Origin: Mizuhopecten yessoensis
Lineage: Eukaryota
Direction of reading: 5' to 3'
Assembly: GCF_002113885.1 (NCBI RefSeq)
Contig: NW_018405583.1
Location: 384,781 to 448,780 of the forward strand
DNA length: 64,000 bases
The notes under the pieces were generated by a model. The model was not told the DNA's origin and searched no databases. It was given only the letters and a program-made list of their open reading frames with translations. Position 1 is the first letter of the stretch. Every line of letters starts with the position of its first letter. Shown one piece after another: positions 1 through 38,307 of the stretch. The position numbers were made by a program, and so were the translations under genes.

Positions 1-180
1 TACTCTACCTGGTATAATATCGGATAATTATTGGTAAACATGTATACTCTACCTGGTATAATATCGGATAATTATTGGTAAACATGTATACTCTACCTGG
101 TATAATATCGGATAATTATTGGTAAACATGTGTACTCTACCTGGTATAAAATCGGATAATTATTGGTAAACATGTATACT
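1..180. repeat. 44-bp minisatellite (TACTCTACCTGGTATAATATCGGATAATTATTGGTAAACATGTA)n
   Basis: About 4 units; the same array occurs at 3603-3782 and 31742-32049. Confidence 0.95.
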
Positions 181-2367: not shown

Positions 2368-2476
2368 CTAGAAAAACAGAATTCTTTTAAAATAAGACTG
2401 ACATTTATTTTATTTAGTTCGACATGATGTCCACTACATCACGGTACGTTTGCACTATCAATGCTTATATGCTTGA

Positions 2477-2652
2477 ATATTTTCTGTTTAGTTCTACATG
2501 ACGTTAAATATTGGTAGATATTTTCTGTTTAGTTCTACATGACGTTAAATATTGGTAGATATTTTCTGTTTAGTTCTACATGACGTTAAATATTGGTAGA
2601 TATTTTCTGTTTAGTTCTACATGACGTTAAATATTGGTAGATATTTTCTGTT
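2477..2652. repeat. 41-bp minisatellite running into the N gap
   Basis: Unit TATTGGTAGATATTTTCTGTTTAGTTCTACATGACGTTAAA. Confidence 0.95.
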
Positions 2653-3602: not shown

Positions 3603-3782
3603 TACTCTACCTGGTATAATATCGGATAATTATTGGTAAACATGTATACTCTACCTGGTATAATATCGGATAATTATTGGTAAACATGTATACTCTACCT
3701 GGTATAATATCGGATAATTATTGGTAAACATGTGTACTCTACCTGGTATAAAATCGGATAATTATTGGTAAACATGTATACT
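3603..3782. repeat. 44-bp minisatellite
   Basis: Same unit as 1-180; borders the N gap. Confidence 0.95.
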
Positions 3783-4429
3783 CCATAACATTTCTTACAT
3801 ATGGATCGGGGCCATAAGTAAATATATAAGATGACCAAGTGTTCCTACATGCTCATTGGTTGGACCCTAATTACATTGTGGTGGGTGATTTGGTCTTTAT
3901 GACGTCCTCTTCTATTGAAATATCACAAAACTATGTGCCAAATCTTGGGTTCTTTCTTTTTGTCAATTATCAAAACAGCAGCAGCACATCATACACAATA
4001 ACTGCATACTTTAATTGCTGAATATCACGTGATTTGGGCATGGAATTTTAAATTTTAAAAGATAACAAGTTTTATAATACTTTTACGGGTTACTAACGAG
4101 TTGTGATTATATCTGGAATTACTTTGTAAAATATGCTATAATATACCTTATGCATTACCAGAAGAGGAATTAAACTAATCGACGCATTGATTTTCAGCCA
4201 AGTGTGACATAGGAGGCAACTCTAATATTAATCAATTCGCAAATCAAATCATGACTAATAAACTCTCACCGGATGGTTTTCCACAATTTAGAGGATGTCA
4301 AGCCTTCATTAAGATATTACCTTTGCAAAGTCCATAAAAGGATTTACAACATTTTAACCAATGAAATATCGGAAATTATTCTTTAAAGAATGACTTAAAT
4401 CCATTGAATATGTAAATAAGTGTACTTAC

Positions 4430-15483: not shown

Positions 15484-18400
15484 TTATAGAGAATAAATGT
15501 GAAAAGTTGAATTTAATGCTGAAAAGGGAACAGAAGAGTCCGAAGAATCTTTCAATTTCATCTCCTTCTTTGTGTTATCCCATGTGAGGCACATGCCTGT
15601 TTATAAACAAATAAAAAGAATGAATCACTTTACATACATGTAGCACCTACTTCAAAATTCGAAATCGATGCCAAAAGCCAAACAAAGTTAACATTTACTT
15701 CAACATTTCGTCCATTCAGGACGACTCATCAGACGTTCTAAAGATCACATGAACAAAAACCCATATCCTAAGTATTTAAAAACATATACAGAAATATCGC
15801 TTAAGGGGAATGGTATATATATAAACTTTTATTATGTAACTATCGTATAGCTTTTAGATTCATTTCTTTTACAAAATTTCATTTAAACCACTCTAGAATA
15901 AATTTCAGCGCTAACTTAACGGTCAACATCGGTAGCACAGATAGTCTATTTGTCAGATAATGATGTATATTTTTATGTTAAATCGATGAGATAATGGGGA
16001 AATATGAACAAACGAACGATTTACATGGAGATTCGTAAAAGGATAAGGAAAAAAGACCAGGTGTTCCAGAAGGAAAAGCGTCTTCTACTTCATCGACCGC
16101 ACTTGTGTAAATCTAGATCAGATCTAAATAATGTCACTTTCTATAATAGATAAAGAGGTCGAGAAGGAATGTCTTTTCCCGCACCACAAACGTTATCAAA
16201 TGATTTGAATTTACATGAACGGCTTCAGTGCATATTTTTCTGCTGAAGTGTTTTAATTGAAAGTCAAAAGTACCTTTTATAGGCCATATTTGACAGGTCA
16301 ACTTACCTTTTAAGATGACAGATTCAAACATATATTCATTTTTTTCCCTCACGTTCTTCAATTTCAAGAGGAAAAACCTAGGATCAGCTTCTTGTAAAGA
16401 CGTCATCGATGTTATGTCCTCCGAGCCAACGGGGCAATTCTTCGTTTTGAAAGAGAAAATTACATTTTGTTATCAATTAATGTTTACATATAGAACCATC
16501 ATGTGAATTAAGGTAGTTGTTTGCTCATCGGGCCAGTATAGCCGTGCACAACATCTGATAATGTGTATCATGCAACTGCTCATTTGTAAAAATAAATTGG
16601 AACAGGCAAGGAATGAAAATGAGAATACTGCTTTAATGGCTGGGACGCGCTCACTAGTATATCAACGTTGAGCGTGGTCAGGGGCTTGATGGTTGCCTGT
16701 TCGCATGTTACAAAACTATGAAAACCAAATTTACCTCATTACCTAAATGATGTTCATTCATTTAGTTGCATTTTGTACGAAGTTTGTTGTGTGACATTTT
16801 TGAAAGTTAAGATATTTCAATCAGATAGTGCCTGTGTCTAATGTTATCCATCATGCAATGATAACACCTGTCAAATCAAGGAAAGCATACCGGTTGCTAC
16901 TATAATTTATATTTAACATAAATCAGTCTAAGTTACTATGTTAAGTTTCTCTTAATTTATAATTAATCACTTAAATTAGTTACATGCAGATTACATGAAT
17001 AATTACATTGGGTTCGAGATCACTTTCCCTAAGTTAAATACTAGCACTTAATTGTTTTTTAACAGTCGATTTAAGATAATATGTATCTGTTATCAACATG
17101 AAACTTACCGAGAGGTCAACAGACGACCGGTTTTTGACTGAAACGTACTTCTCCGTTCCTACCGGCTGCAGAATACATAGGAAGCAACTTTGATTTTCAC
17201 TATGCTGTTTTTGAAAACCATGAAATATACTTTTTCTGAAATGAACTGAAAGAAAATAAATTTTGTTTTTGCCATTACTGCTTTTTCAGCTTTAAGAAAT
17301 ATGGTCTCTGCATTCTGTCATCATTCAAGTAAATCGAAAGTTATAGTATCATGTGTTTTGTTATATGTTCCTTTATTTAAATATAGATAACAAAGTTACC
17401 AACTTCAATATTGATTGAGCCTCAATATTACTTTTTGTTCCCAATTAGAACTGTCTAACACAGAATTGACATATATTTGAGACTATTATGAAGGAATGCC
17501 TCATCACATGTTGGTCTGGTTTTTAATTGCTATCAACTCAACCAAACAAAAACACAAACAATAAATAAAAAATATATAGAACATTTGAAATAGCGAAATA
17601 CTATATAACCAACAAACCCCGGCTAAATAGCTAGACAACTAGGCCATTGAAGCCTGAGGTAATGTGATATATTACATGATGTGTCGGTTCGGGAAGGGAG
17701 ATTACTCATGGTCAGCTTTCCGTCTGTCCCACATTCCAGGTAAAGCTGGGATATCGGCGTGTCTATAGCTATCAGACATACATCTGTCCCCTTATGATGT
17801 ATACAGTAGACAGCGGAAAAACCAGAGAATCTGCTCAAAATTGTGGTTCTTGTAAACAAAGCAAAAGCTGAGCCACCACCTACAAAACACAACCAGTCTT
17901 ATTTTTTTAAACGGTTTATATCTTCTGTAATTAACAGAATTAAATATCATTTAAAAGGTCCAGCTGCACCATTGTGCATACAGACCAGGAGTTGAACTTT
18001 AGATTAACTTTTTTCGACTTTAAGCATTTTCCTTTTTTTATATTACACATTTAATGGTACTCTTATCTTAATGCATATATTACAAAGTAGTAAAACGTGA
18101 TGTTGTCACTGAAAATCACATATTTTCCCAATTGAATTATGTATGTAATATTATAGGCCTTAAACATGCATTTTATTCAATATTTTCATTAAAGATATCT
18201 ATTCCTTTTTGGTTCTCTCTGCAAATATTCAAAAACAAAATCTAATTTACGAAAGATGTTTATTATGGCATAAATATTTTTCTATTCAGATAATTTAAAA
18301 AAGATCTATGAAATTAAAATCTCTCGTTCACGATGATGAAAGTTTACCCCGAGATATCAAATAGTCCACCTCTATTTCAAAGGTCGTAACGGTGTCTTTA

Positions 18401-21400
18401 TCTGCATCGGTCCATTCTTTTCTTTCAATTACCTATAATTAGAAAAATTCTTATAAGAGACGAGACATAGTTGTGTAGTTGGAGCGGTTTTAGGATGTCC
18501 TATAAGAGATGAGTTGTAGTTGTGCGCTTGTAAGGATTTAAGGATGTCATATCAGAAATGAGACATAGTTGTGTAGTTGGAGGGGTTTTATGATATCCTA
18601 TAAGAAATGAGACAAAGATGTGCAGTTGAAGTGGTTTAAGGATGTCATATAAGAAATGAGGTATAGTTGTGTAGTTGGAGGGGTTTTATGATGTCCTATA
18701 AGAAATGAGACAAAGTTGTGCAGATGAAGTGGTTTTAGGATGTCCTATAAGAAATAAGGCATAGTTGTGCAGTTGGAACAGTTTAAGAATGTCTTATAAG
18801 AGAAGAGTTATAGTTGTGTGTGTAGTTGGAACGGTTTCAGGATGTCCTATGAGAGATGGGGTATACTTGTGTAGTTAGAGAAGTTTTAACCAACCCAATA
18901 ATGTTGACCAATACTTTAATTGAGTGGAGACACTCATTCTCTTGTTTCCAAATATAATCACAGGCTTGGCGGTAAAACTACGTTATTGAGCAAAGTACCA
19001 TTTTAACGCTCGTCTCAATTCCGTCCCAACAAGTAGGTATAACACTGTATGAAAATACCTCATTAGAGCGGATATCAATCATGTCAAGTATCCTGAACAC
19101 TGAACCTCGTTGAATATGATGAGGCTTTCATCATAATAACTGTAGTCACTTTGGACTAAAATATAAATTTTACCCTTATTGTATACATAGGCGTATATTG
19201 TCGTGACAGTCTTATTATCATATATAGACAGGCAGAAAATAACAAACCAGACATGGCCCAATTGAAATTAGACCACCTGTCCCATGGTTACTTAAGGATT
19301 TTGTACCGCTACAAAAAAAACTGTCAATATGTAATGGAATGTGTTTTCCCAGCATGGCTACAGCTTTGATAGATTATTACTGAAACGAACCCCATGCCTG
19401 GCGGGTATTTAATGCAAAACAAGGGATGATGAAATAAACTATATATAATCGACAACAGTGTATGAATGTAAAAATACAAAGTGGTAATTGAATTCTGGAC
19501 CTCAGGTTGTTATAATGTCGCTCTAACCAATAAACGAACGTGTTTGTTTACCAATAGCACAGCAGCTATATCTAAAACAAACTTAAAGATAGGTTACTGT
19601 GTATACAAAAAAGGAACCCTGGTGGAATTTTCAGTGTTTTGCATTCGATGGAACAGGAATGCTCAAGTGGTAAGATTTAAAAGTTCTTTGGGATACAAGG
19701 ATATATGGACATGTAAATCGTCAACTTCACTCTCGTGCGTTCTAGCATTCGATCAGAGCTTAATCTCAAACAGCAGCGGCGATAAGCTATTATTAATACA
19801 CAATGACCAATCAAATTTGTTGTAGCAAACACATCCACATAAACCGCCCATTATTAACAACAAACAGACTACACATTAGGTCATGATTACAAGCGTTGCA
19901 GACGCTCTCCCTAGAAACAAATTATTTTGATCATGGGAACATCAGAAATGGTAAAAACGCAACGAAAATAAAATCTTAAAAAAAGAGAAAGTAAAATATG
20001 AAAAAAGTGAAAGGTTCAAGAAAAACTGAAACAAAACGGCCCTCATAATATAAATACTAAGCCAAACCTCCTATAAAATGTAGTTTGCTATAATTACAAT
20101 GGACAGACGACTTCGTTCTGGGTGAAACATCTGTTGGAGAAACTCCACAACTTCATGATGTTCCCTGCAGCTTACAGCGATGTTATTGATGGCTAAGAGT
20201 TTGTCATTTTCCCTGTAAGATAATTTAAAGAAAAAACATAAATTCATATGTAAAAACGCCTTTCATAAATGAGAAAATTGTTCTACAACTAATCCCGGCA
20301 TTCTAACTAGGTAGAATTGTCTTTTATTGAGGACACCTTTGTCTCGTCTTTGCATTGGTTAATGCAAATGAGCATTTACTTTTGGCGAACGTTTTACGTT
20401 CCGATATCAAATGTCCTCAACAGAAAAGAACCATGTCTTCAGAATTTTTTTCAAAAGTACTAAAAACATATTAGTTTTTATTGTTATACTTATGAGAAAT
20501 GCTCATGTGTAACATTCACATATAAATAATGAAATGAAATTTTCATTTAGTTTATATTTCAATTAAAAGAAAAAGAAAAAATTCCAATGTTTGTTTGCTA
20601 TTTACAAGGTTAAATGTATCATATCGGACACTAGATAACATTACAATCAACGCAAATCAAAACTGATAATACGCTTAGCACTACGAAAGTCTTGGACAGT
20701 TATAGCCGTATGATTGGTGAGTTAGACAATACTTGATAATTTGACATGAAGATAGTGTGCTAGTAAGAGGGTTTCCTAGTATAAAAAGTATTATTCAGGC
20801 ACTCAAATAACAACGAAAATGTAACTAAGCAAAATGGCAAATGATATCAAAGGTATCCGGAAATGACGACATAGCATCGGCATATAAATTGCATAATGGA
20901 AAAACGGCAACTGACACCATTTACTCACGTTAGTTGTAATTCGGAAACTATGTAGTTATTTAAATCCAGTTCTACGATCCTAAATCCGGATTCACTTTGC
21001 TTAATCTTGAATCCAGCTTCCACTAACTCTCCAGCAGCCGTCTTGATCCAAATATCTGACTTTTTCCCACACAACCCATCGGTTTCTTTTACTTTATCCT
21101 TCAAAAAAAATCGAGACGTAGATTTCTTCCATTTGTATAAAAATTTGTATAACGTTTAAATCGTATACTGTGCAGATTGAAAATCAAAGAAATATTTATA
21201 AAAGGCAGGTTTCCACAGTTTTTCTCGTTGGGATTGCCCCAGCTGATAGCGCAAAGCCTTTTACCAAGACGGGTTCGGACATGAAAAGGTATGGGTCACC
21301 TTCCCAACCAAACATGTTTTCTCCGGACACTCCGGATTCCCCCAACATTAAGACCCCTTGCGTGCTTCCATGTACACTTTGGGCAACAAATGTGACCATA

Positions 21401-21934
21401 ATAGCTGATTGTTTTCTTTTCATATTTTTTTGTAAAATAAATAAACTTATAATTTAACTTACATCACATGCATACAGTCGTGTCAAATATAGATATGATC
21501 TCATATAGTTAATTTTACAATTCCATACGGAGCAGGATAAGGGTTTTTATAACTTTTAAGAGCTCTGAGAATGACGCATACACACCTTGACAAAAGTCAC
21601 AGCTTTGTGTGGTTTATAAAAAAGTGGACATGTTAACGGGTTTGGTTTTAGAGTCCGAGACTAAAACATGTACACTTAAACTTAAAAATGACTAGTTTGT
21701 TGTTTGGCTGGCAGACACGGAAGTCCGTCTGACTATCTTTTATATGTCATACAGATTGCTCATTAAAAGGAAAATAATCTGTCTTTGTGCAATTATCATC
21801 CATTTCGTATGAATTCTAACTTTATGATAGCATCGAGTGCCAAGTAATTGATTAGGCCAATATCTTACCTTAATCGATGTATCGGAAGGTAGCTTGTTGT
21901 GATCTGATACAGGATAGTGTAAAATGCCACCCAT
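15484..21934 (-). CDS. PDZ + IL-1-like beta-trefoil protein, type 1 copy A (8 coding exons, 340 aa)
   Basis: Exons (minus): 21934-21869, 21098-20929, 20212-20098, 18432-18348, 17879-17676, 17245-17109, 16439-16307, 15596-15484. All introns are GT-AG with compatible phases (0,2,0,1,1,0,1), giving a 1023-nt open frame. Protein: MGGILHYPVSDHNKLPSDTSIKDKVKETDGLCGKKSDIWIKTAAGELVEAGFKIKQSESGFRIVELDLNNYIVSELQLTENDKLLAINNIAVSCREHHEVVEFLQQMFHPERSRLSIVIERKEWTDADKDTVTTFEIEVDYLISRGGGSAFALFTRTTILSRFSGFSAVYCIHHKGTDVCLIAIDTPISQLYLECGTDGKLTMSNLPSRTDTSFHFRKSIFHGFQKQHSENQSCFLCILQPVGTEKYVSVKNRSSVDLSNCPVGSEDITSMTSLQEADPRFFLLKLKNVREKNEYMFESVILKGMCLTWDNTKKEMKLKDSSDSSVPFSALNSTFHIYSL*. PDZ hallmarks: AGFKI loop and NDKLLAINN..V....HHEVVEFL. 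IL-1 hallmark: DPRFF...YMFESVILKGMCL. Confidence 0.85.
18460..18885. repeat. ~49-bp minisatellite in a type-1A intron
   Basis: Units like GAGACATAGTTGTGTAGTTGGAGGGGTTTTATGATATCCTATAAGAAAT. Confidence 0.9.
21228..21372 (+). mobile_element. Degenerate copy of the SINE at 29223-29440 (also at about 51458-51600)
   Basis: Shares GGGTCACC..CC.AAC..GTTTTCTCCGG.CACTC.GG.TTCC..C.ACATTAAGA.CCC with the intact copy. Confidence 0.7.
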
Positions 21935-23109
21935 TGCTGCAATATATATATATATATATAGTATTACAATTTTAACCTTAAAAATAAAAAGTAAAATAGG
22001 TGAATTGCATAAATATATCGAAAGGAAAATGAGCAGCCCTTGACGCTTGAACCGCATCATATTTCTGTACCTGTTGTTATTCTTTTCTATATATTAACTA
22101 TCAGGTGGATGTTTGATGGTTTTAGATATTACCAAGGTCGATACGGACTCAAAACCGAACCGAAGGAAAATCAAAACGGGAAGAAAAATAGCAATACTAT
22201 CACCCAAAGGAAATTCGTCATGAATTACAAAGCCTCACAGGCAAAACTGGTTGTTAGGTTGTTCAATTAGGTTTCCCGTCATGGGGTAGGTTTTCAACGA
22301 TTTTAGACACGGAAACAATATTCCTTAAGTAACGTCAACGACCCAGTGTTCTACGCCGGTAAGTAACCATCGTATAAGCAAATCACGGGCGCATCATGTA
22401 AAGATTATAAAGCGCGAAATAAAGGATTTGAAAATTTTCTTTACATCTTATCTGAGATAACAAATCGCTATACAAGAAAATATCAGCCGCCAATTTAAAA
22501 AAAAGCAAATAAATTCTAAATAATAATGTGGTGAAATAAGATACAATCTTGAATCTCAAAAAGCCACACCGTCCGATAAGTAGAACGCCCAGTAGTCCCT
22601 CGTCGTTACACTGTCTAGACTCCAATTCAAAATTCTAGCTGGTCGTCCGGCGAATGCCCCGGTAAGCACAAATCGAGCAGCCCCTCGGTGAACATCTCAA
22701 TGATTAATTAAACTAGTTCTGACCGTTTTAACGATCATGTGAGGCATTGCGATGGTGACTCTGGTCAAACCGAGGTAAATATATTTGTCATCAACTATCT
22801 AGGACTAAGGCAGCATGTCTTTAAAAATATTTTTATTGAAATTTGAATAGGGTTAGGATGACGATCGTTAAATTGCCTCCTCTTTTCATTTTCAAAATAA
22901 AAAATTATAGTGACAATGCGGTAACAAAATGTAATTTGTTTCGACACCCCTCCTTTTTATCAAGACATAAACATGAAATCTTTATATCGATATTTAAAAA
23001 CAAAAACAGTATAAATACGTTATCATACCAATAAGACATGAACATGTAAAATAACGTATGCGATTAATTAAACATACCTCATTAAAAATATTCACCATTC
23101 ACCGATAGT

Positions 23110-23156
23110 GGGAAATTTCCGCAGAGTCAAATAATTGCCCTTCGCCGGGAAAATCC
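23110..23156. promoter_or_regulatory. Two NF-kappaB-like sites in the 5' intron of type 1A
   Basis: GGGAAATTTCC (23110-23120) and GGGAAAATCC (23147-23156). The second is conserved in copy B (53309-53318); the first is mutated there. Confidence 0.45.
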
Positions 23157-23763
23157 ATATCCGCCCAATGTTTTGGTTGTTAGTGTGATCGCATTGAAAC
23201 TATTATGGTTGGGTAGCCCTGGGTTCAGGAAAATAAAATATCCCTACAGAGTTGTCAGATACCACTGTGTTAGGAAGTAAATATAGGTCTAGTAAACAAA
23301 GACAAGGAACTTCGTAAAACTTACCTGTGTAAACTAGCTATCATTATCACTACCTTACAAGATTCATACAGAAACACATGGAAGGCTCTATACAATGACG
23401 GCGTTAACAAGGTAGCTCAAACGGTTAGTGCTAAAGTATAACAATCTGTGGTCCAGGATTCGCATCCTGAATGCAGGAATGTTTACACTCAGAACACTTA
23501 GTTGTTAACTAATTTTTCATTAATTACCTTGGTGTTTATAAATATAATGATATACGATCATGATAAATTAGCACGATCACACAGTGGACGGAACTTTGCT
23601 ATAGAACAATTTTAGAAATAAACTCACATTGTCATAGAAAGAAAGAAAAAATACCGAGACGTATTATTCACAAACACTATCCAATAGGTACGAATGTGCC
23701 CTTATGAAATAAGTTATGTATTTCATGTGTTACCATGTTGTGGTGATATATAAGGACACTTAC

Positions 23764-23840
23764 CGTGCTTTTTCTCCACCTCCTAGAAAATTGAATCGGA
23801 ACTCGTTTGAAACGAACCTTACGAATAAATACTTCCTGGT
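23764..23840 (-). other. Putative non-coding first exon of type 1A (copy B: about 53922-54000)
   Basis: Strong donor CACG|GTAAGT conserved in both copies; ETS-like CAGGAAGT just upstream. The 5' end is uncertain. Confidence 0.45.
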
Positions 23841-24674
23841 TTTAATAATAAAAAAAAAATACTTGTGCCTGTGTCTGTTGATTCTTAATTCAAAATACAA
23901 CACACCTCTGTATCAGGTAGTATTATCAATGTACCCAGCGACTTCGTATATGGTATGTTGTAGTTTACTATGTAATGTTCTATTAAGTATTAAATACCTT
24001 AAGTGTTCTCATCAAAATTCCCTGGGGGTGGGGGTTCCATGTTGGGGAAAATTGAGGGAAAATGGTGAAAGTGAAAATACATGATTTCAAAAGAAAATTC
24101 GCAAGGTGGGATGGTTTCCTGAAGCCAAAGNTTTAAGTTGGTGTACAAAGGACATTGGAAAACAAAAACATTCTGAAAAGAAACTCAGAATTATAAAATT
24201 TATTACTTACGATAAGACAATGATCCATATATGCCGACCTATAAACAACCCTTTGTTTATCTATAACGGTAGTTGACATGTCTATTGTTATCACTGTGTA
24301 TCATTGTGTTAGCGGATAATGACACCAGGATTGATATCAACGTCCCTTATCTGTTTCGTCATAAAGTTGAGCAGTACATTTTAAACACATTTATAACGTG
24401 TCGTCAAATTGTTTTTTACGGTCAATAAATTTGATATTAAGCACTCAAATTTTATCATTTACTTTCTTTATTGATATGATAATTATGTATGCTAATTATT
24501 TTTATGAATTTTGAAGTGTCAATAAAGTCATTTTACATGTACATATATAGCAGACTCACTCAATAGCACATCCGCATATTCAAATCAGCACTTTGTCGTC
24601 CTTGTAATCCTCCCCCTCCTCCTCCTTATTCCATCTTTCATAATAAAATCTTCATTAACATATCATTGGTTGAG

Positions 24675-24705
<31 letters not shown>

Positions 24706-24706
24706 G
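24675..24706. repeat. (CAT)n microsatellite
   Basis: About 10 TCA units. Confidence 0.9.
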
Positions 24707-27524: not shown

Positions 27525-28100
27525 TATAGTCAGTTACTGACCCTCTACAGAACCATAGAGGGTCAGTAAGATTTATAGGGGGCGAGGGTGGAGCCCGAGC
27601 CTCCTATACATCTTACTGTATCGCAGTATCGCAGTATTCGATAATTTATCGCATCGAGGACCCTTTTTGCTTAAAATGATAGTGATGTAATGCATAACAA
27701 AACAATATGAATATTTAACAAATTTAATCAACTTTTATAAAGGAAAATAATATTAGTTATATAACAAAAACATAACAATCCTGATGTTTCTCCATGAGAA
27801 AATCCTTAAAACACTTCACACACGTCTTGTTGGCCTTTTGCGTTTGGGCAGACTGACTGTTTAGTCGCTTCTTGTCTATTTCTTCCGTTGTCGTCTGCCC
27901 AAATCTCTCCATGTTGTTGTTGTGCTGTTGTCTCTCAATGTCACCGAAACGCTTAGATAAGGGGACGGCACCCACGCTAAAACAAAAGACGGTCGCTTGC
28001 GACAGCGTCTTACTAATTTTGCCTGGCGTAGGGGAAGCAACTCCTATCATTTTACGATACAATGTATGATACAATGTGAGATGAATCAGTGGACGACGTG
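27525..28100 (-). mobile_element. Truncated Crypton-like (DUF3504 tyrosine recombinase family) element fragment
   Basis: ORF 28113-27757 contains MERFGQTTTEEIDKKRLNSQSAQTQKANKTCVKCFKDFLMEK, resembling the RF..xxxEE....N..S.NT.K.....K.F.D.L N-terminus of Crypton/DUF3504 proteins. Adjacent hairpins: TTACTGACCCTCTA..TAGAGGGTCAGTAA and CGAGGGTGGAGCCCGAG. Confidence 0.5.
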
Positions 28101-28440
28101 TACATGTATACATGTATATATTTTAACGAAACATGGCGACTTCTCACTGGACTACGGTGACCGCTAATCACATGTAGAGAACGAAGAATGAAGAATATCC
28201 GTCTTCAAAATTACGATGAATGTGGAGTAGTTTGACCAGTGGTATCCATTAATATGTAGAGGCAACCAAGTAGATCATGATGAGTCAAGTAGAGGTTAGG
28301 GTTACATTATTATACGAGAGATCGCCATTGTCCGTCCACTCGCTTCGGCCACCGGAAGTTTGTCTAATCATGTGATGTTTGTCCTTCAGAACGATCTGCT
28401 TGGCGTATCTTGAAGAATTTTACATCAGTGCATTGCCGTT

Positions 28441-31400
28441 TCACGTGAATATATCAAACTGCAGTTCTGGCGAGATTTGGTAGAAATGGTTTAAATCTGA
28501 TTTTGGCTTTTTCATCGATAATCCATTTTTTCCACATCTTAAGTACACACCTAAAATATAACAACATTTTTAATCTTTTTATTATTTTGCCATGTTAAAG
28601 ATATACTTTTGCATTAATTCGCAAGCAGAATAAATCTTAAATTGAAATAGATTACGATAATCAATTTCACATACATATTCAAATAAAATATATTGTGAAT
28701 GAACATATTACGAAAACCAATCGTGAAATTGAATATTCACGAAACAAAATGATATAAAGCTGTCAGAGAGAGGAGGGACAAGATTTTAATAATTGAATAA
28801 ATTGATATGAAGAAAACCCAATAGAATTATCATTTGCAAAAAAACACGAAAAACAAAATCAAAATCAAACGTCAATGCATCAGCTGACATGACGTCATGA
28901 GTTTTTGTTTATTAAACCAACCATACATGTAACAGATATATCTGTATTAAGTACGTATAAGGTATAATTGTATGCATCATCATTAACAAAATCATGTAAA
29001 ATTAGATTAAAAATCTAAAAATATTTAAAAAGGTCCAGACACAAAGTCAATGGGTGACTTACCTTCATATACCAGTGACTCCAAAAGATATTTGTGGTTT
29101 TTCATCAGACGGACCTTGAAGAACCGACAGTCCGGTTTCCGTACCGTTGAGATATCACGAGAAAGAGAGGAACTCTCCTGTAAACATTTAATAGGAATCA
29201 TATATAATTTATCATTAGTGTTGGTCGGGTGGCGCAGTGGAAAACGCACTCGCTTTTTACCAAGGCGGCCGGGGTTCGATTCCTCGATCGGACGTGAACA
29301 GACATGGGGTCACCTGCCCGAACACGTAGGTTTTCTCCGGGCACTCAGGTTTCCTCTCACATTAAGATCCCCCGTGCGCGAACATCCGGGCCAGCAAGAG
29401 TGATTAATATAAGTTGAAATCAATTGTTTCATAACTGTTGTATATATATTTATATAAAAATGTTACTTACTCCTATCGCGACTCTGTTCCCACCCTAAAT
29501 AGTAAGAAATGTAATATGTTTATACCGACACAAATGTTACTTACTCCTATCCCAACTCTGTTCCCACCCTAAATAGTAAGAAATGTAATATGTTTATACC
29601 GACACAAATGTTACTTACTCCTATCCCGACTCGATTGCCACTCTGTACTGTGACAAATGTGTTGCTGTCTAAAGATCTGAAGGCGCAGAAGAAGACTGGT
29701 GGACACATTGAGTTACTGACCGTCCGAGCCTCCAGTCCATGAAAGGTCCACCATTGGAACTGAACTAAAGACAAATAGAAGATATGTAACATCTCATATA
29801 CCTAGGAGCTATATATACTCTATTAACCACATCTTCAGAACACGAGAACCCGGAGTCAAAACAGAAGGGCAATAATACGAACTTGGAAACACGGAAACGG
29901 AACCAGGGTTTAGGTAAGGGTAAGTTTTTTGTCTAAGTGCAATTCGTAGCACAAAAAGAAATCAAAAGAAATCAACATCATATCAAGTAACATCAAAAAC
30001 AAATCAAATTGCAACAAATTTGTATAAATACAGTATACACCTTGTTATACTGCCACCATTTTTCCAGAGAAAGGGTGACGTTATGAAAGAGTTTGGCGTT
30101 AATTGAGGGAAATGTGTTTGTGAATTCTTAAGAAAACGAGAATAAAAGACACTAAAATATGTAGGCGGTAATCTAACCAAAATCTACCGAGGTGCACCAT
30201 ATCAAGGTTTTAATGTAACACCAAAACCACATCACAATCAAATGGTTTTTTCATGGCAAAGATTGTTTATAGACTGTCATCATGAATCACTCAGTTGACG
30301 TATTTTGTGACACAAAGTCCCTTGATGGGTGCCACATGTAATGAAAAAAGTTCATTTTTGCGTAAAGTAATGGAACGTTTAATACGTTGGTTATTTTCTT
30401 AGAGGAAATGACAGATATTTTCTAAAAATGTTAAATTAAATTGGACCTTGAAAGTACATGCATGGTAGGCATGCAATCTATGAATGATTTTAACGTGGCA
30501 AATTATCTCCAAAATTCTTTCTCAAATTATTATGATTCGAGTAAGTTTTAAAATATCTCTCTAGAGATAAATATTGCAAAGTTAATATGAATGAGTTCAC
30601 AATATAAATATAATTTATATGAATCTTCATTGGATTATAATTACTTAAATAGAACAGATAACGCGTGATGTGTTTTTAAATATTGAATATACAATATAAC
30701 CTCGACTTAACGTCACAAGCTGAAATATCAGTATAACATCCATATATTTACAAACGATAAATATGCAATATGACCTATCTCTATTGATATTCGATGTTGA
30801 CAGAGTAAAGCCTTTATTTAGCGTCAGCCATACTATTTATAGTAAGACAAATACCAACAGTTATATTAAAATATTAATATAATATTATTAAGTTCCATGT
30901 AGACACTTTTTTGATAGACACAAAGTATGATACTTAGCTAGGAACCACATACTACTGTAACAGGAAAGAAAATAGTGTGCTTTCACCGGGAATCGAACCC
31001 TCGATACCACCCTCTAACTCGAAGCTAGAAGGCGACCGTAATCCTATGTACAATTAAAACCTGGCACACTACTCCCCTCTTTTTAAATGTGTTCGCCCTC
31101 GAACACCACAACCAAGGTTCTAACTCCCTGTCACCACAGGGTGAGCCATGGACACCATTTGTAACAGGAAAGTGAATAGTGTGCTTCCACCAGGTATCAA
31201 ACCCCAATCCCTAGGTTCCTAGTCGGACGCTCTACCACTGAGCTAAAGGGAAATTCCCTTTAGCTCGAAGCTAGAAGGCGACCGTAATCCAATGTACAAT
31301 TATAACCTGCCACACTTCCATTGAGTTTGTTTTACTTTCTCCCGATATAAGACATATCCCCCCACCCCCCACCCCCACCCCCCACTTCTATAGATCGCTT

Positions 31401-34400
31401 TTAGTTTTAAGTGTTACTAGTAAACAATCAACCCCTCTCTATGACGTCAAAATATGTCAAGGAACATGGTGGTAGTATATGGAGTATTCCATGAACATGT
31501 TCACTTGCAGCATCCTTAGAGTAACAAAACAATATTACTTACATTTGACGTCACTTTTACCGGTGAAGGGGTTACTCGTGGTCAGTTGTTTATCCTGGAC
31601 ACTCAAGTGTTGGTCATTGTTCTTGATCCAACACACCTTGGAGCCTTTAAACTCCACACAAATAATTTTGGTGAACGTCAAATATGGGCAAGTGACGACA
31701 TCGACGGTCATTCGTAGAATAGTATCTCCTTCAAAGGAAATGTAAACATGTATACTCTACCTGGTATAATATCGGATAATTATTGGTAAACATGTGTACT
31801 CTACCTTGTATAATATTGGATAATTCATGGTAACAATGTATATTCTACCTGTTATAATATCGGATAATTATTGGTAAACATGTATACTCTACCTGGTATA
31901 ATATCGGATAATTATTGGTAAACATGTATACTCTACCTGGTATAATATTGGATAATTATTGGTAAACATGTATACTCTACCTTGTATAATATCGGATAAT
32001 TCATGGTAACAATGTATACTCTACCTGTTATAATATAGGATAATTATTANGATTGGGGCCATAAGTAAATATATAAGATGACCAAGTGTTCCCTACATGC
32101 TCATTGGTTGCACCCTAATCACATTGTGGTGAGTGATTTGGTCGTTATGACGTCCCCTTTAATTGAAATATCACATAATTGTGTGCCAAATCTTACGTTC
32201 TTTCTGTTTGTCAATTATAAAAACAGCAGCAGCACATCATACGCAATAACTGCATACTTTAATTGCTAAATATCAGGTGATATGGGCATGGAATTTGTTT
32301 TGTTTTATGATACTTTTACGGGTTACTAACGAGTTGATTATATCTGGAATTACGTTGTAAAATATGCTATAATATACCTTTTGCATTACAAGAAGACGAA
32401 TTAATCTAAACGACGCATTGGTTTTCAGCCAAGTGTGACATAGGAGGCAACTCTAATATTAATCAATTCGGAAATCAAATAATGACTAATAAACTCTCAC
32501 CGGATGGATTTCCACTATTTAGAGGATGTCAAGCCTTCATTAAGAGATTACCTTCGGAAAGTCCATAAAAGGATTTACAACATTTTAACCAATGAAATAT
32601 CGGAAATTATTCTTTAAAGAATGACTTGAATCCATTGAAAACGTAAATTAGTGTACTTACCACGTGTAGGAAATTCAAACTGTACGTTAATTTCAATATA
32701 ACGGACTTCATTCTGTCCTCTGTCGTCCGTCTCAAAATTTCGACCAATCACCTAATCATACAAAAGTACCAGTTTGAATACGGTATACCGGGAAAATTTC
32801 GCCGCAGTTTAACTGTCGCCCTTTTCGCCCTCCGTAACGAGGGAGAATCTGTCACGACATTGAAAATAAATACACAACCTAATACACGTAGTAATAACAA
32901 GTAAAGGGCGAAATTAACCCTGAACGAAAACTGATTCTACCAGTGAAAGGCGAAAAATTGACTGGGCGAATAAATTTCACGTGAATAATCATTTATACAT
33001 AGCAAGACACATGCAGGCCGAGAGTAAAACATGCATCATTGTTCTTGCGAAAAAAAGTAAAACATGCAGGCTCACTCAATGAAACATGCGCTAATCCTGA
33101 GAAATGTAGAATTGATTTTTACCGAAACATTTATAATATATCCTACCATTTTGAAGAATCCACTGTCTTCTCCATAGATATGTTGTAACACGGAGACCAA
33201 TATGTGATGGTCGTATAGACGAACGTCCACGTTTTTGACCCCAACGATTGAGTCATCAGTCCTAAAAAAGACATAAGAAAGTTCATATGACGATCGGGAT
33301 CAAAACCTGGACCCGTATTCGTGAACCGTTCTCATGTTTAAGCGTGGTTCTGTGTCCAAAGCAACTTTCCTGTTGCTCGCTAAAGTGATGTGACCAAATT
33401 AAAAAATAACTATAAAGTAAAAAAACGATATAAGGCTTCACGATTTTCTTAAAGCCTTCCAAATCACTGACGAAATCTTATTTTGAAAAAAAGAATGGTT
33501 TCATAAATACGGCAAAGTGCTCAGTGTGCGCCACCTTGTTGATGAAACAAGAAGACTAGTTTGATCCTATGATAAACATAAAAGAATCGCACGGTCACGT
33601 AACAGTAAAAATTGACAAGCTTTGAAGTCGGGCGTTTCTCCTTTGTAGTCTTTAAATGACAGGCATCATTCTAGCGATTGGTCAGGTTTTTTTTACCCGA
33701 GACCAATCAAACAGCTATTTTCGTGCCTTCAATTTTGCTATGACATGTTCCAAGGGTGCAGAGAGCGAAAGTGAACGTAACCCCTGTATATCGAGGATGC
33801 TGTAACGCATTTGCTTTCGCAATAAAAGCCGAATAACATAGGGATAGTCATGGGTTTGTAATTGGAGTCAGTAGGCCACACGAAATGTTATTATTATTCC
33901 TTTCTGAATCAGTTCAATACCATATTGGAAAGGTTGAATACTTACTGTAGACCCATGTGCTGCACGTGGCTGTTATCATTGTCGGTTACACAGATCGTGT
34001 GACCAGATAATCGTGATGACGTCAGAGAAAACCCAGCATTTTCTTTGTGTGATCTAGTTAGTTGAAACTCGATATGAGTTTGACGTTCTTTGAGGTCTTC
34101 ATTCTAGAAAAACAGAATTCTTTTAAAATAAGACTGAAATTTATATTTTTCTGTTTAGTCCAACATTACGTTAATATTGGTAGATATTTTCTGTTAAGTC
34201 CTACATGACGTTAAATATTGGTAGATATTTTCTGTTAAGTCCTACATGACGTTAAATATTGGTAGATATTTTCTGTTCAGTCCTAGATGACGTTAGATAT
34301 TGGTAGATATGTTCTGTTTAGTCCCACATGTTGTTAGATATTGGTAGATATTTTCTGTTTAATCCCACATGACGTTAGATATTGGTAGATATTATCTATT

Positions 34401-37400
34401 TAGTCCTACATGTTGTTAGATATTGGTAGATATTTTCTGTTTAGTCCTACATGTTGTTAGATATTGGTAAATATTTTCTGTTTAGTCCTGCATGTTGTTA
34501 GATATTGTTAGATATATCTATTTAGTCCTACATGATGTTAGATATTGGTAGATATTTTCTGTTTAGTCCTACACGACGGTCAATATTGGTAACAGGTATT
34601 TTAGATAACTGAAAGTTTTCATGCACAATTTCTAAACTACGTTAAAATAAATTCATACCATAATGTTTCTATTAACAGATGAAACAAGGCAAACTATTCT
34701 TATTAATCTTTTGTTTAGCAAGCTGATTCTAATTATAGTAGGAAGCATACTCTGAGACTGTAATATCTCCTACTTTTGATTCTTCAGATAATTCAAATTG
34801 AAAACAGATATTTGGGGCATTTCATTTATAGCCTTAGTGTTAATCGGAATGAAATGGTAAGTTTGTTTTTGAGCACAGAAAAGTTATTAAAAACTGATTT
34901 TACGAGCTTTCGAAAACGTCTGTTTCCTTTATCAAGCAAAAAGTTTAAATGACCGGTGCCTCGACTCTTAATCGCTGAAAATATGTCACTAAACTACAAT
35001 GTGCCGAATCGGTCAAGTCAGCTGTCAGCAAATAAAGATATATTTTGTCCATATAGCACTCTAACAATGCAGCCAGCCAGAGGGACGGGTGATATATGTA
35101 CACATACAATTTTACATTTTGTTTCATGTTATATGCATTTAAGCTTTATAACCCCCGAAGAACTACAATGATACAGCAGTACAATATATACTTAATGTAA
35201 TATGATATGGAATCAATTAGATACTGCTACTTTATTCTACAATTGGTAATTACTTATTTACCTGTTATATACTTATTGAATGTGTGAATTTGGCTCTGGG
35301 CAGCTGAGATGTGTTTTTTTTTTCTTTTAGCTTATATGACGATATGAAGTAACTCCTTTCAATTTAATTAAAGAATTATCATATTATTTGCAGGAGTTGG
35401 TGTAACCCTACTTCCAAATAATATATCTAATTGCTGAAATTGGCTTTTGATCCTCAACAGTGTATGGCTAGTATGTTATATATATGGACTGTATGGCCTG
35501 TATCTGTTTGGAAAATAAATCCAATATCACCAAATATGTATACTCAACAGTTTACCTTATATGAATACCAGTAACGCATTGTCTAATCCTTGAAATTATT
35601 CACTAAAAATAATAGTCTTGTAAATATCTCAAATTAAATATCCCTAGTGAAAGGGTTACTATCTCAAGGGTATTGAACAAATCTGTTTAAATCAAGGAGT
35701 TATCCCAATCATCATATCCTTACCACCTGATGTCCCCTCAAGGAGAGGACTTAGGCAGGCTATGCCTGATGTCTGATCCTATTGACTATTGTTTAATTTG
35801 TCAATAAAATTTGTTAAAATTGAAATATATTAACACATTCCGCCCCTTAGTGGTATTAATATAGAATATAGTTAAGAAAACAGATTTTGCGCAAATGATG
35901 ACACTTGGATAAAGAAGTTTCTTTAATTTCAGGTTTGATGTCTTGAATTAACAACACTACCTAAAGGGGCAAACACGGAAGCAGCAGATATATAGTCAGT
36001 ATAGTTCTGTAAGTATACTTGGGGTATAATAAGCTATACAAAATGTCATTACCACATTCTCAGGCGATCCACATTCACAATCATTGATTTCATTTTCAGA
36101 AGTATCCTTGCTTGTATCGATGTGGCTATTACCAGAGTCACGTGCTACTGGGTGGTGTGTGGGACTGCTTGTATGATCCTACAAAACGACAATGGAATAT
36201 CAAGGTCAATATCTGATATGCAGATTGTGTGATGTCTAAACAAGAAAAACGGAAATTTTTCAATTTCCGGACGTGTACCTCTCTATGCCATATGCATAAA
36301 CACAACATGAGAAAGTACACATAATGAAATCGAAAAATTAAGACAATTGGCCAAAACATTTGTTTCTATTTTTGTGTGATTAAATATATCATGTAACAAA
36401 AATAAATATAATTTGAATTTGCAAAACGGCAAAGTTAGAGCCGCCGCGGTAAAGTTTCCACGTCCTGTATGTATGCCTAATGATATATAAAATGAACAGT
36501 ACCTTGTCTTCGGTTGATACACTTTTACAATCATCCGATAGGGTGACAGAAGCGTCAGAGTTTGTGTCAGGGTTGTTATAGTCAGAGTCGACATGCGGCA
36601 TCTCATGTTCCACTGGACCGCTTGTAGGCCTACGCGTCGTACCCTAGACAGAAAAAGACTATTATCACGAAAACTCGCAGGATTCTTAATATTATATAAA
36701 TACTGCATTTATTTGTATATGACAGTGCCTAGGATCACCCCGAGGATATCACTGTCACCGGAGTCGAAACCGAAGATGACAGTGATATGTTGTGTAAACT
36801 ATAAAAAACGGACAAACTGACACGGAATTTTTTTAAGACGTACAAGGAGTATAAAAACTAGGACCAGGTGTTCCGAAAGGGAAAGCGTCTTCTGCTTCAT
36901 CTATGACACCCATCATACCAATATTGGCCATATCTACACAATGTAACGTTCCACAAGGTGAAACCCGGGCGAATGTAGTATTTATTTTATTATACTGAAA
37001 GTCAATATGGCAGCTGAAACGAACCGTACGCACATCTTTTTTGCGAGCGATTACTATTTTGCACTGTCACACATGGTATCACTCGTTGGTAGGGCGTTTG
37101 GAAGCAACCTTCCATTGACTCAATGTCAAAGCGAATGTAACAGTGTGAAATGAATAATTTGTCTCGACCAATCAGATTACAGGGTTTCGCTTGAGATATA
37201 ATTATTTGAAATGTCAATTTCAGAAACTTAATGTTGTTGTGAGACAATAGAGAGACAATACATCACAATATCGGTATTAACAGCGCGTAAACACCAGACT
37301 TATATACACTGTTATCTAGGGCACAAATGGAACGAAATAAATTTTGCATTTATGACGTTTTATATCTTTAACGCACGACGAATATATGTGCGTAAAGGTT

Positions 37401-38307
37401 GACAATAATAAGGATTACATACCGTTGGCGTTAAGTCGGCCTCGTTCACAGACAACGTTGAGATCCTGCTTAGTACATTGTCCGAGCTGAAGTCAGGCTC
37501 TGGTGTAGGCGAATAGTTAGGCACAGCAAACCCGAAAAACTGAAGGAAAAGTGGTCTTTGTCAACGTCATTTACGCCGTTGTTGTACTTCTTTAATCATC
37601 TGACTACGGAATTATGCTTGCCAACAGTGCATTTCAAACTTTGATCAAATAGATTATAATTATATTTAAAGAATGTCAAAACCGAAACAAAACAAACATA
37701 GTGTAAAGGTAACTTATATTATCAAAAGGGCAAAGTACCATTCCATGTTTTATTTTTTCGACTCGTTCAGATATTTATTTTGATTTTATGACAATGTTGT
37801 TGCCTCCAGGGCAGCTGATTATATGACATTACTTGTGTTTGGTGAAACAGCTTTGGTATTTCTACTTTATTGTGTGAGGTAATTTCATGAAGTATAAAAT
37901 TGCCACGTTAAATTTTAATGAGCGATAAATACTTTAAAATTAGAAAAAATAAAGGAATTGACTGGAACATATCATTTACCGCTAGGTTTATAATATAGAG
38001 ATGACGTAAATAAGTTAAATGCAATGACGAAATACAGAAATAGAAGACACTTTAGGAAGAAAATCTATACCAAAATTAATGCAAAATGAAATAAAAGTCA
38101 AACTTTTTCGTTCTTATTCACTAATACAGATAGTGTTATCTTTACCTGGAAGCATTGTTGAATACATTCACATACCAATGTTTTTTGTGTGATTTATTTT
38201 CTTTAGGGTACATAATGCACTGTTTCTAGAATCAATAAACTCACACTGTTAATCACGATTATATAGAAACATACCTCATCGGAAAATATCTCGACATCTG
38301 CCATCAT
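28441..38307 (-). CDS. PDZ + IL-1-like beta-trefoil protein, type 2 copy B (11 coding exons, about 445 aa, long acidic S/T/P/D-rich N-terminus)
   Basis: Exons (minus): 38307-38275, 37539-37423, 36643-36503, 36178-36053, 34103-33946, 33261-33147, 32751-32661, 31728-31543, 29764-29619, 29177-29063, 28550-28441. All GT-AG, with an in-frame TAG upstream of the ATG. Protein: MMADVEIFSDEFFGFAVPNYSPTPEPDFSSDNVLSRISTLSVNEADLTPTGTTRRPTSGPVEHEMPHVDSDYNNPDTNSDASVTLSDDCKSVSTEDKDHTSSPTHHPVARDSGNSHIDTSKDTSENEINDCECGSPENVNEDLKERQTHIEFQLTRSHKENAGFSLTSSRLSGHTICVTDNDNSHVQHMGLQTDDSIVGVKNVDVRLYDHHILVSVLQHIYGEDSGFFKMVIGRNFETDDRGQNEVRYIEINVQFEFPTRGDTILRMTVDVVTCPYLTFTKIICVEFKGSKVCWIKNNDQHLSVQDKQLTTSNPFTGKSDVKFQFQWWTFHGLEARTVSNSMCPPVFFCAFRSLDSNTFVTVQSGNRVGIGESSSLSRDISTVRKPDCRFFKVRLMKNHKYLLESLVYEGVYLRCGKNGLSMKKPKSDLNHFYQISPELQFDIFT*. 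The last 7 exons have the same phases as type 1. A possible extra 55-nt exon (35778-35724) is unresolved. Confidence 0.82.
29223..29440 (+). mobile_element. tRNA-derived SINE (V-domain-like) in a type-2B intron
   Basis: A-box GGTGGCGCAGTGG, B-box GGGTTCGATTCC, central GGGTTTTCTCCGGGCACTCAGGTTTCCTC. Confidence 0.8.
29461..29634. repeat. 74-bp tandem repeat (about 2.3 units) that duplicates an exon end and splice donor
   Basis: TGTTACTTACTCCTATC.. at 29461, 29535 and 29609; the last unit overlaps the 3' end of exon 29764-29619. Confidence 0.9.
30956..31314 (-). mobile_element. TRIM-like miniature LTR retroelement with tRNA-derived LTRs
   Basis: Direct repeats 30956-31068 and 31160-31314, both with TG..CA ends. 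The 91-bp interior has a PBS-like TGGTGTCCATGGCTC after the 5' LTR and a polypurine tract AAAAAGAGGGGAGTAG before the 3' LTR (minus strand). Flanks CTAC/CTTC form an imperfect 4-bp TSD. Confidence 0.75.
31742..32049. repeat. 44-bp minisatellite in a type-2B intron
   Basis: About 7 units, some with 1-bp deletions; abuts the acceptor of exon 31728-31543. Confidence 0.95.
34144..34590. repeat. 41-bp minisatellite (about 11 units) in a type-2B intron
   Basis: Diverged variant of the 6079-6815 array. Confidence 0.92.
36860..36970 (+). mobile_element. Short dispersed repeat remnant (Penelope-like terminus); also at about 9885, 16055, 38530 and 46355
   Basis: Shared motif GGTGTTCCG.AAGGG.AAGCGTCTTCTG.TTCATC. 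The family label is from memory. Confidence 0.45.

What the first reader, a model, noticed from the sequence alone, without database searches (positions are those of the whole stretch)
15484..38307. Two anciently diverged paralog types sit head-to-tail with identical core exon architecture
Seen: types 1 and 2 show no obvious nucleotide similarity, yet share seven core exons with the same phases (0,2,0,1,1,0,1), an equal 115-nt second PDZ exon, and sparse motifs (AGF, HH, VI.R....TD, C...KG..VC.I, F.F....FHG, D.RFF, ES....G..L). Inference: an old duplication produced the pair, and a recent duplication copied the pair. This parallels clustered vertebrate IL-1 genes, where neighbours can be agonist and antagonist.
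Basis: partly seen in the sequence, partly recalled or inferred. Interest (0 to 1): 0.7.

Follow-up and report, generated by a model that had tools for sequence, protein, structure and literature searches.

The report
Tandem scallop IL-1-like (IL-1anc) gene pairs

Summary
The window is Mizuhopecten yessoensis contig C2256. Its minus strand carries four genes in the order 1B, 2B, 1A, 2A.

This model equals RefSeq LOC110449157 (340 aa). Type 2 (LOC110449154) has the same seven core exons, cut at the same alignment columns and phases. That includes a 115-nt second PDZ exon. It also has three extra phase-0 N-terminal exons.

The two types share no nucleotide similarity but are clearly homologous:
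- BLASTP between orthologues gives E = 8e-28.
- The profile-profile comparison gives 99.6% probability and E = 7.6e-25.

The type-1 to type-2 order on one strand is also seen in Ylistrum. In Pecten the two genes lie 27 kb apart on one chromosome. The A and B copies differ by dS 0.06-0.08 and about 8% in introns, and they sit in a clean tandem unit of about 30 kb.

The PDZ + IL-1-trefoil family (IL-1anc) was published in 2025-2026, with several genes per bivalve and conserved intron phases. This is therefore a new member of a known kind. The agonist/antagonist idea is untested.

The parts
15484..21936 (-). Type-1A gene (RefSeq LOC110449157, 340 aa). Coding exons: E0 21936-21869 (ATG at 21934), E1 21098-20929, E2 20212-20098, E3 18432-18348, E4 17879-17676, E5 17245-17109, E6 16439-16307, E7 15596-15484. 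PDZ = E1-E3; beta-trefoil = E4-E7; FES motif at the end of E6.
   Evidence: RNA-seq junctions; splice sites and phases; the chain translates to P0006 exactly; named by NCBI.
28438..38307 (-). Type-2B gene (RefSeq LOC110449154, about 446 aa). E0 38307-38275; three extra phase-0 N-terminal exons 37539-37423, 36643-36503 and 36178-36053; core E1 34103-33946, E2 33261-33147, E3 32751-32661, E4 31728-31543, E5 29764-29619, E6 29177-29063, E7 28550-28438. LES motif at the end of E6.
   Evidence: Colinear scan for same-phase exons; the chain reproduces P0009 up to E5; E6 and E7 are conserved in the orthologues P0002, P0007 and P0008 and in copy 2A. No reads were laid on this gene.
45532..52293 (-). 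Type-1B gene (RefSeq LOC110449155; intact, about 339 aa). E0 CDS 52293-52228, E1 51323-51154, E2 50444-50330, E3 48778-48694, E4 48201-47986 (12 nt longer than in 1A), E5 47555-47419, E6 46731-46599, E7 45629-45532.
   Evidence: Mapping of the 1A exons; open frame through E1-E7. P0001 is its RefSeq isoform X2, whose 3' end is read into an intron. 25 of the 35 variant letters in the RNA reads are the 1B base.
1..9704 (-). 5' part of the type-2A gene. E0 9704-9672, E1 5969-5812, E2 5030-4916, E3 4520-4430. E1-E3 appear a second time at 2367-829, inside the 99.9% repeat around the N gap. E4-E7 lie left of the window, at about -3948 to -11745 (loci L003 and L002).
   Evidence: tblastn of exon peptides on the extended contig; splice sites; self-blastn 1-2652 = 3603-6254.
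23994..24128 (.). Junction between the two tandem units. The head of unit A ends its similarity to 54147 at 23994. The tail of unit B is similar to the stretch downstream of 2A from 24128 on.
   Evidence: blastn of the unit ends.

Best explanation
The stretch is part of a four-gene cluster of 'ancestral IL-1' (IL-1anc) genes in the Yesso scallop. Each gene encodes a leaderless protein with a diverged N-terminal PDZ domain, a short linker and a C-terminal IL-1-type beta-trefoil of 12 strands, with an (F/L)ES motif in strand 9.

An old tandem duplication, older than the split of the scallop genera sampled, produced two types. They now share about 25-28% of their residues but keep all seven core exons at the same positions and phases. 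Type 2 later gained (or type 1 lost) three phase-0 exons that encode an acidic, probably disordered N-terminal extension.

In the Mizuhopecten lineage a unit of about 30 kb holding one gene of each type was then duplicated in tandem (dS about 0.07). All four copies keep open frames and evolve under purifying selection.

By analogy with the tested sea-urchin and lamprey members and with IL-1beta/IL-18, the products are most likely intracellular pro-forms. Their trefoil would be released by proteolysis or cell damage and would signal through Ig-TIR receptors. The gene structure, the homology, the fold and transcription are shown here. The cytokine function, the processing and any division of labour between the types are inferred.
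For: Gene models: RNA-seq junctions. The 1A chain equals P0006 and the 2B chain equals P0009 up to E5.

Homology of the types: BLASTP E = 8e-28; hhalign 99.6%, E = 7.6e-25; exon-wise sum 13 SD above shuffles; identical intron columns in alignment A3.

Age: two clades at 100/100. Type 1 then type 2 lie on one strand in Ylistrum, and 27 kb apart on one Pecten chromosome.

Recent unit duplication; dS 0.064 and 0.080 with dN/dS 0.36 and 0.18; intron p-distance 0.086 and 0.078.

PDZ: sub-threshold Pfam PDZ hits. Nearly all of the 36 weak PDB profile hits are PDZ domains. The model shows a PDZ-like order of strands and helices in residues 35-140.

Family: PMC13736523 describes PDZ + IL-1 trefoil genes, several per bivalve, with three in Pecten maximus.
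Against: - The AF2 model is only moderate (mean pLDDT 60.5, trefoil blocks 46-82). The type-2 model failed (pLDDT 41), so the fold of type 2 rests on its homology to type 1.
- The lead of IL-18 and IL-33 over lectin and FGF trefoils is only about 2-3 Z units.
- The PDZ hits do not reach Pfam's cut-offs.
- No sequence search links these proteins to vertebrate IL-1 or to any homologue outside Pectinidae.
- I could not check the paper's supplementary tables, so I cannot show that the Pecten orthologues are its PmaxIL-1 genes.
- No TIR-domain match lies on this 618-kb contig.
- No functional data exist for any mollusc member.
Confidence: 0.85

Rival explanations
1. The proteins are PDZ-linked beta-trefoil proteins with an intracellular role, such as scaffold, lectin-like or FGF-homologous-factor-like. 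They are not cytokines, and the likeness to IL-18 is only the common trefoil fold.
Against: The twelve best VIA rows are all IL-18 and the next are IL-33, covering 144-149 of about 156 residues. The (F/L)ES motif sits in strand 9, as in IL-1 (PMC13736523). The architecture and intron phases are those the paper uses to define IL-1anc. Its sea-urchin and lamprey members are induced by immune challenge, and one is cut by caspases. IL-1beta and IL-18 also lack signal peptides.
Confidence: 0.1
2. The A and B copies are not two loci. They are two diverged haplotypes of one type-1/type-2 pair that the short-read assembly placed in tandem.
For: The assembly has local faults here: 1-2652 repeats 3603-6254 at 99.9% around an N gap, and single N's sit near the unit junction. 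Bivalve haplotypes can be very diverged. The RNA runs show mixtures of 1A-type and 1B-type letters, which alleles would also give.
Against: About 8% substitutions in introns, plus many indels of kilobase size. That is far above usual allelic divergence, which I judge from general knowledge and did not measure here. The unit junction is clean, with a unique sequence order. RefSeq annotates separate genes. Ylistrum has an extra partial type-2 copy of its own, so the locus does duplicate.
Confidence: 0.07
3. The two types are a working pair in the way of vertebrate IL-1 neighbours: one an agonist and the other an antagonist, or one an inducible IL-1beta-like form and the other an IL-1alpha/IL-33-like alarmin with a long pro-domain.
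For: The pair has been kept side by side in at least Mizuhopecten and Ylistrum, and both types are under purifying selection. Only type 2 carries a roughly 130-residue acidic N-terminal extension, encoded by three extra exons and E0.
Against: Nothing here bears on receptor binding. Neither type has a signal peptide like IL-1Ra's, judged by eye from the N-termini. Keeping two old paralogs needs no antagonism.
Confidence: 0.12

Closest known systems
IL-1anc family (PDZ + IL-1 trefoil), Fontenla-Iglesias et al., Nat Ecol Evol 2026 (PMC13736523; preprint PMC12338702)
   Same: N-terminal PDZ and C-terminal 12-strand IL-1-type trefoil, (F/L)ES in strand 9, under 500 aa, no signal peptide, introns with conserved phases in both domains. 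The paper reports several genes per bivalve, including three in the scallop Pecten maximus on chromosome 14. The Pecten orthologues found here lie on LR736851.1, which should be chromosome 14 by the order of the accession numbers; that is my inference.
   Different: The main text does not describe the head-to-tail pair of two deeply diverged types in scallops, its conservation between genera, or the recent duplication of the whole pair in Mizuhopecten. I could not read its supplementary tables. The linkage to an IL-1R-like gene reported for cnidarians and ambulacrarians was not seen on this contig.
Human IL-18 and IL-33 (IL-1 superfamily)
   Different: Sequence identity is 12-15% and no sequence search finds them. 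The vertebrate proteins have no PDZ domain. Processing and receptors are unknown for the scallop proteins.
Vertebrate IL-1 gene clusters (for example the human 2q14 cluster with IL1A, IL1B, IL1RN and the IL36 genes)
   Same: Tandem arrays of diverged paralogs with a shared exon structure, made by repeated local duplication.
   Different: The scallop array arose independently. Its members keep the PDZ exons. No member is shown to be an antagonist.

Membership tests
IL-1anc (PMC13736523) | N-terminal PDZ domain | tested here: inconclusive
   Pfam PDZ and PDZ_6 hits are all below the curated cut-offs: E = 0.0035 for exon E2, 0.019-0.23 for whole proteins, and 4 of 8 members hit PF00595. Nearly all of the 36 weak PDB profile hits are PDZ domains, best E = 0.028. 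The AF2 model of residues 35-140 (pLDDT 72-87) shows a PDZ-like order of strands and helices. The evidence is consistent, but no single test passes a threshold.
IL-1anc (PMC13736523) | C-terminal IL-1-type beta-trefoil of 12 strands | tested here: met
IL-1anc (PMC13736523) | (F/L)ES motif in beta-strand 9 | tested here: met
   FES in 1A, LES in 1B, 2A and 2B, and E-S invariant in all seven aligned proteins. In the model, FES (residues 297-299) ends the ninth trefoil strand, E292-299.
IL-1anc (PMC13736523) | Conserved intron phases in the PDZ and trefoil domains | tested here: inconclusive
   Phases 0,2,0,1,1,0,1 are identical in types 1 and 2. The same exon boundaries appear in the Pecten and Ylistrum loci. 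The paper's phase figure (Extended Data Fig. 7) is not held as text, so I could not compare with its values.
IL-1anc (PMC13736523) | Shorter than 500 aa and without a signal peptide | tested here: met
   The proteins are 340, about 339 and about 446 aa. By inspection the N-termini are polar or acidic and have no hydrophobic core. No signal-peptide predictor was run.
IL-1anc (PMC13736523) | Immune-induced expression, caspase processing, release | not testable with these tools
   Only baseline transcription of type 1 was seen, in two public RNA runs.
Pfam IL1 (PF00340) / vertebrate IL-1 by sequence | Significant sequence match to IL-1 family profiles | tested here: not met
   There is no IL1 hit in Pfam scans at E up to 1, and no IL-1 chain in the PDB profile search at E up to 10. 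The paper reports the same for all invertebrate members.

The most novel reading that the evidence does not exclude
The type-1/type-2 pair is a conserved two-component cytokine module of scallops. Type 1 would be a compact IL-1beta/IL-18-like pro-cytokine. Type 2, with its long acidic pro-domain, would be an IL-1alpha/IL-33-like alarmin or a competitive antagonist. Selection would keep them adjacent for co-regulation, which would make this an independent invertebrate parallel to the vertebrate IL-1 agonist/antagonist cluster.
Probability: 0.12. Interest if true: 0.6.

Novelty: new member of a known kind. Interest (0 to 1): 0.3.

Why it matters
The report gives exact, RNA-supported gene models for four IL-1anc genes in a farmed bivalve. 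It shows that RefSeq calls all of them 'uncharacterized protein', and that two of its isoforms (LOC110449155 X2 and LOC110449154 X2) lose the end of the trefoil by reading into an intron.

Scallops turn out to keep two deeply diverged IL-1anc types side by side, and the locus still duplicates. This provides a natural set of paralogs (1A/1B, 2A/2B, and type 1 against type 2) for testing how invertebrate IL-1-like signalling works and diversifies.

It does not change the published picture of the family.

Tried and rejected
- Pfam on single exons found only a weak PDZ hit.
- The tRNA scan found nothing.
- tblastn of type-1 exon peptides did not find the type-2 exons at E = 1e-3 or better, and the reverse also failed. 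Exon-versus-exon blastn gave only noise. Homology therefore had to be shown with full-length database proteins and profiles.
- A word search with the mixed profile A3 found no relatives outside Pectinidae. The all-against-all representative search with the E4 profile found only three proteins.
- A profile search of the scallop's own genome found the family only at this locus, plus two tiny contigs.
- The AF2 model of the Pecten type-2 protein was too poor to use (pLDDT 41). Its Foldseek search gave nothing significant.
- The PDB sequence search gave no IL-1.
- Supplementary tables of the paper and of the preprint are not held, so I could not match LOC numbers to the PmaxIL-1 names.
- The TIR search found no receptor gene on this contig.
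- I could not determine the orientation of the two Pecten genes relative to each other, because the fetched loci do not overlap.
Searches were made exon by exon by reference, and whole-protein work used database proteins. The full-length 2B model (446 aa) was therefore never searched or folded. In the sandbox, exon chains were only compared for equality with P0006 and P0009.
Full report
WHAT IS THERE

The window is G000:C2256:384781-448780, from a 987.6-Mb, 82,659-contig eukaryotic assembly. Database proteins that map to it at 100% are named by NCBI as Mizuhopecten yessoensis LOC110449157, LOC110449155 and LOC110449154. The organism is therefore the Yesso scallop.

Self-comparison shows a tandem repeat with a period of about 30 kb at 82-91% identity: 1-15759 matches 31841-45798, and 15997-23994 matches 46296-54147. 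All genes of interest lie on the minus strand.

TYPE-1 GENE MODEL

I laid raw RNA-seq reads of the same species on 15400-21300. Two runs from two studies gave seven junctions, all GT..AG on the minus strand. They define these exons:
- E1 21098-20929 (170 nt)
- E2 20212-20098 (115 nt)
- E3 18432-18348 (85 nt)
- E4 17879-17676 (204 nt)
- E5 17245-17109 (137 nt)
- E6 16439-16307 (133 nt)
- E7 15596-15484 (113 nt, with the stop)

Loose read ends at 21101 lead to a start exon at 21936-21869, with the ATG at 21934. The exon chain translates to P0006 (LOC110449157, 340 aa) without a difference.

Of the 35 positions where the reads differ from 1A, 25 carry the base of copy 1B. Two forms of the E3/E4 junction are seen, one of 1A type and one with the extra bases of 1B. 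Both copies are therefore transcribed, and 1B dominates in these samples.

TYPE-2 GENE MODEL

First, I scanned 27.5-38.4 kb for open AG..GT exons with the phases of type 1. The scan found a colinear set:
- E1 34103-33946 (158 nt)
- E2 33261-33147 (115 nt)
- E3 32751-32661 (91 nt)
- E4 31728-31543 (186 nt)
- E5 29764-29619 (146 nt)
- E6 29177-29063 (115 nt)
- E7 28550-28438 (113 nt)

E2, E4, E5 and E6 score 41-52, against about 24-28 for the best chance candidates. E1 is marginal. E3 and E7 are placed by position, by splice sites and by the motifs at their starts.

Second, RefSeq LOC110449154 isoform X2 (P0009) is reproduced by the chain E0 38307-38275, three further exons 37539-37423, 36643-36503 and 36178-36053 (all phase 0 on both sides), and E1-E5. 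That isoform then reads into the intron after E5.

Third, E6 and E7 are conserved in the full-length orthologues from Pecten, Argopecten and Ylistrum and in copy 2A.

The full 2B product would be about 446 aa.

The only slip is one dot too many in VI.R....TD.

ARE THE TWO TYPES HOMOLOGOUS?

At the nucleotide level nothing beyond noise is shared. tblastn with exon peptides does not cross between the types either.

Exon-by-exon local protein alignments give scores of 31, 52, 24, 45, 50, 41 and 21. Their sum is 13 SD above shuffled controls, and each exon matches its own counterpart best, apart from E7. The type-2 exons were chosen partly by these scores, so independent evidence was needed.

A profile of the E4 peptides, searched against 1.84 billion representative proteins, returned three proteins. 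Word searches then gave nine scallop proteins in all:
- Type 1 from Mizuhopecten (1A and 1B), Pecten maximus, Ylistrum balloti and one Logan transcript-like contig.
- Type 2 from Mizuhopecten, Pecten, Argopecten irradians and Ylistrum.

BLASTP of the Pecten type 2 against the Ylistrum type 1 gives E = 8e-28, with 28% identity over 298 colinear residues that span the PDZ, the linker and the trefoil. hhalign of the type-1 alignment A5 against the type-2 alignment A6 gives probability 99.6%, E = 7.6e-25 and 253 columns.

In the joint alignment A3 all six internal core introns, and the intron before E1, fall in the same columns.

AGES OF THE TWO DUPLICATIONS

In a maximum-likelihood tree the two types are separate clades (100/100). 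Each contains several genera. The branch between the clades is about 2.9 changes per site, against 0.3-0.4 for terminal branches. 1A and 1B are sisters.

In Ylistrum, type 1 (record 320213-330931) lies upstream of type 2 (345341-355554) on the same strand. A further partial type-2 copy lies 7 kb downstream. In Pecten the two genes are 27 kb apart on LR736851.1, and I could not establish their relative orientation. The pair therefore predates the split of these genera.

The recent event copied one unit that holds both types. Unit A runs from about -15157 to 23994 and unit B from 24128 to 54147. The two gene pairs show the same divergence:

| Pair | dS | dN/dS | intron p-distance |
|---|---|---|---|
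| 1A vs 1B | 0.064 | 0.36 | 0.086 |
| 2B vs 2A | 0.080 | 0.18 | 0.078 |

All four copies keep open frames. E7 carries in-frame indels in 1B and 2A. No further copy lies within 30 kb to the left or 20 kb to the right. A profile search of the whole genome finds the family only here, plus two tiny contigs.

A haplotype mis-assembly is a minor rival. It is unlikely given about 8% intron divergence and kilobase-sized indels.

WHAT THE PROTEINS ARE

Sequence methods see only a weak PDZ:
- Pfam hits are below the cut-offs.
- Nearly all of the 36 weak PDB profile hits are PDZ domains.

An AF2 model of P0006, built with the seven-sequence alignment, has mean pLDDT 60.5. The PDZ part (residues 35-140) scores 72-87. 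The C-terminal part scores 46-82 and has 12 strands, and the FES motif ends the ninth strand.

Foldseek against the PDB ranks human IL-18 first (E = 2.6e-4, TM 0.72), followed by designed and FGF trefoils, IL-33 and IL-38. VIA-align gives these results:

The type-2 model failed (pLDDT 41), so the type-2 fold is inferred from homology.

COMPARISON WITH WHAT IS KNOWN

Fontenla-Iglesias et al. (bioRxiv 2025, PMC12338702; Nat Ecol Evol 2026, PMC13736523) define 'IL-1anc'. It has an N-terminal PDZ and a C-terminal IL-1 trefoil, an (F/L)ES motif in strand 9, usually no signal peptide, and conserved intron phases. [quoted passage not shown] The paper models PmaxIL-1.1 to 1.3 from Pecten maximus and places the Pecten genes on chromosome 14.

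The Pecten orthologues found here lie on LR736851.1. By the order of the accession numbers that should be chromosome 14; this is my inference. The supplementary tables are not held, so I could not confirm a one-to-one match.

The architecture, the fold call and the phase conservation are thus already published. What this window adds is modest:
- exact models for four Mizuhopecten genes;
- the demonstration that scallops keep two very diverged types head to tail;
- a recent lineage-specific duplication of the pair;
- two RefSeq isoforms whose trefoil is cut short by read-through.

MECHANISM AND ITS LIMITS

By analogy with the tested sea-urchin and lamprey members (immune induction, cytoplasmic or nuclear location, caspase cleavage of SpurIL-1.3) and with IL-1beta/IL-18, the likely working is as follows. 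A leaderless pro-form has its trefoil freed by proteolysis or cell damage, and the trefoil then signals through Ig-TIR receptors. All of this is inference for the scallop genes.

No TIR match lies on this contig.

It is replaced in the Pecten and Logan type-1 proteins.

The agonist/antagonist parallel is untested. The only structural hint of different roles is the acidic N-terminal extension of type 2.

PROCEDURE

Exons were searched by reference, and whole-protein analyses used database proteins. In the sandbox, exon chains were only compared for equality with P0006 and P0009. N stretches were left as they are.

Noticed in passing
window 1-6254: 1-2652 repeats 3603-6254 at 99.9% identity on either side of a 950-base N gap (2653-3602), so exons E1-E3 of gene 2A appear twice. 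This is most likely an assembly artefact, not a real duplication.
   Followed up: partly
window 46875-46988 and 29550-29618: RefSeq isoforms LOC110449155 X2 (P0001) and LOC110449154 X2 (P0009) end by reading into introns. They lack the last trefoil exons, including the (F/L)ES motif. They could be true short isoforms or annotation errors.
   Followed up: partly
window 6079-6829 and 34147-34591: A minisatellite with copies about 41 bp apart sits in the intron upstream of E1 in both type-2 copies. The array is longer in 2A.
   Followed up: no
window 18449-18888 and 48799-49331: A tandem repeat with copies about 49 or 98 bp apart sits in the type-1 intron between E2 and E3, in both copies.
   Followed up: no
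window 62799-63374 (+): An open frame of 192 aa looks like a reverse-transcriptase fragment of a non-LTR retroelement, judged by eye from the sequence. No family scan was run.
   Followed up: no
window 27760-28122 (-): A 121-aa open frame lies just downstream of gene 2B and is not part of the IL-1anc genes. It may be a remnant of a mobile element. It was not scanned.
   Followed up: no
L008:27593-30166 and L007:23314-23433 (Ylistrum balloti JAUZWB010000060.1): Ylistrum has a second, partial or diverged type-2 copy 7 kb downstream of its type-2 gene. It also has a duplicated last exon of type 1, 2.6 kb downstream of that gene. So the locus duplicates independently in other scallops.
   Followed up: partly
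G000:C50775:1-403: A 403-bp contig carries a third, diverged copy of type-1 exon E6 (76% amino-acid identity). It is either an unplaced allele or a fragment of a further copy.
   Followed up: no
L003/L002 (left of the window, about -4131 to -11061): Two introns of gene 2A are several kilobases longer than in 2B: 4361 against 441 nt, and 2425 against 1778 nt. This points to insertions after the duplication.
   Followed up: no
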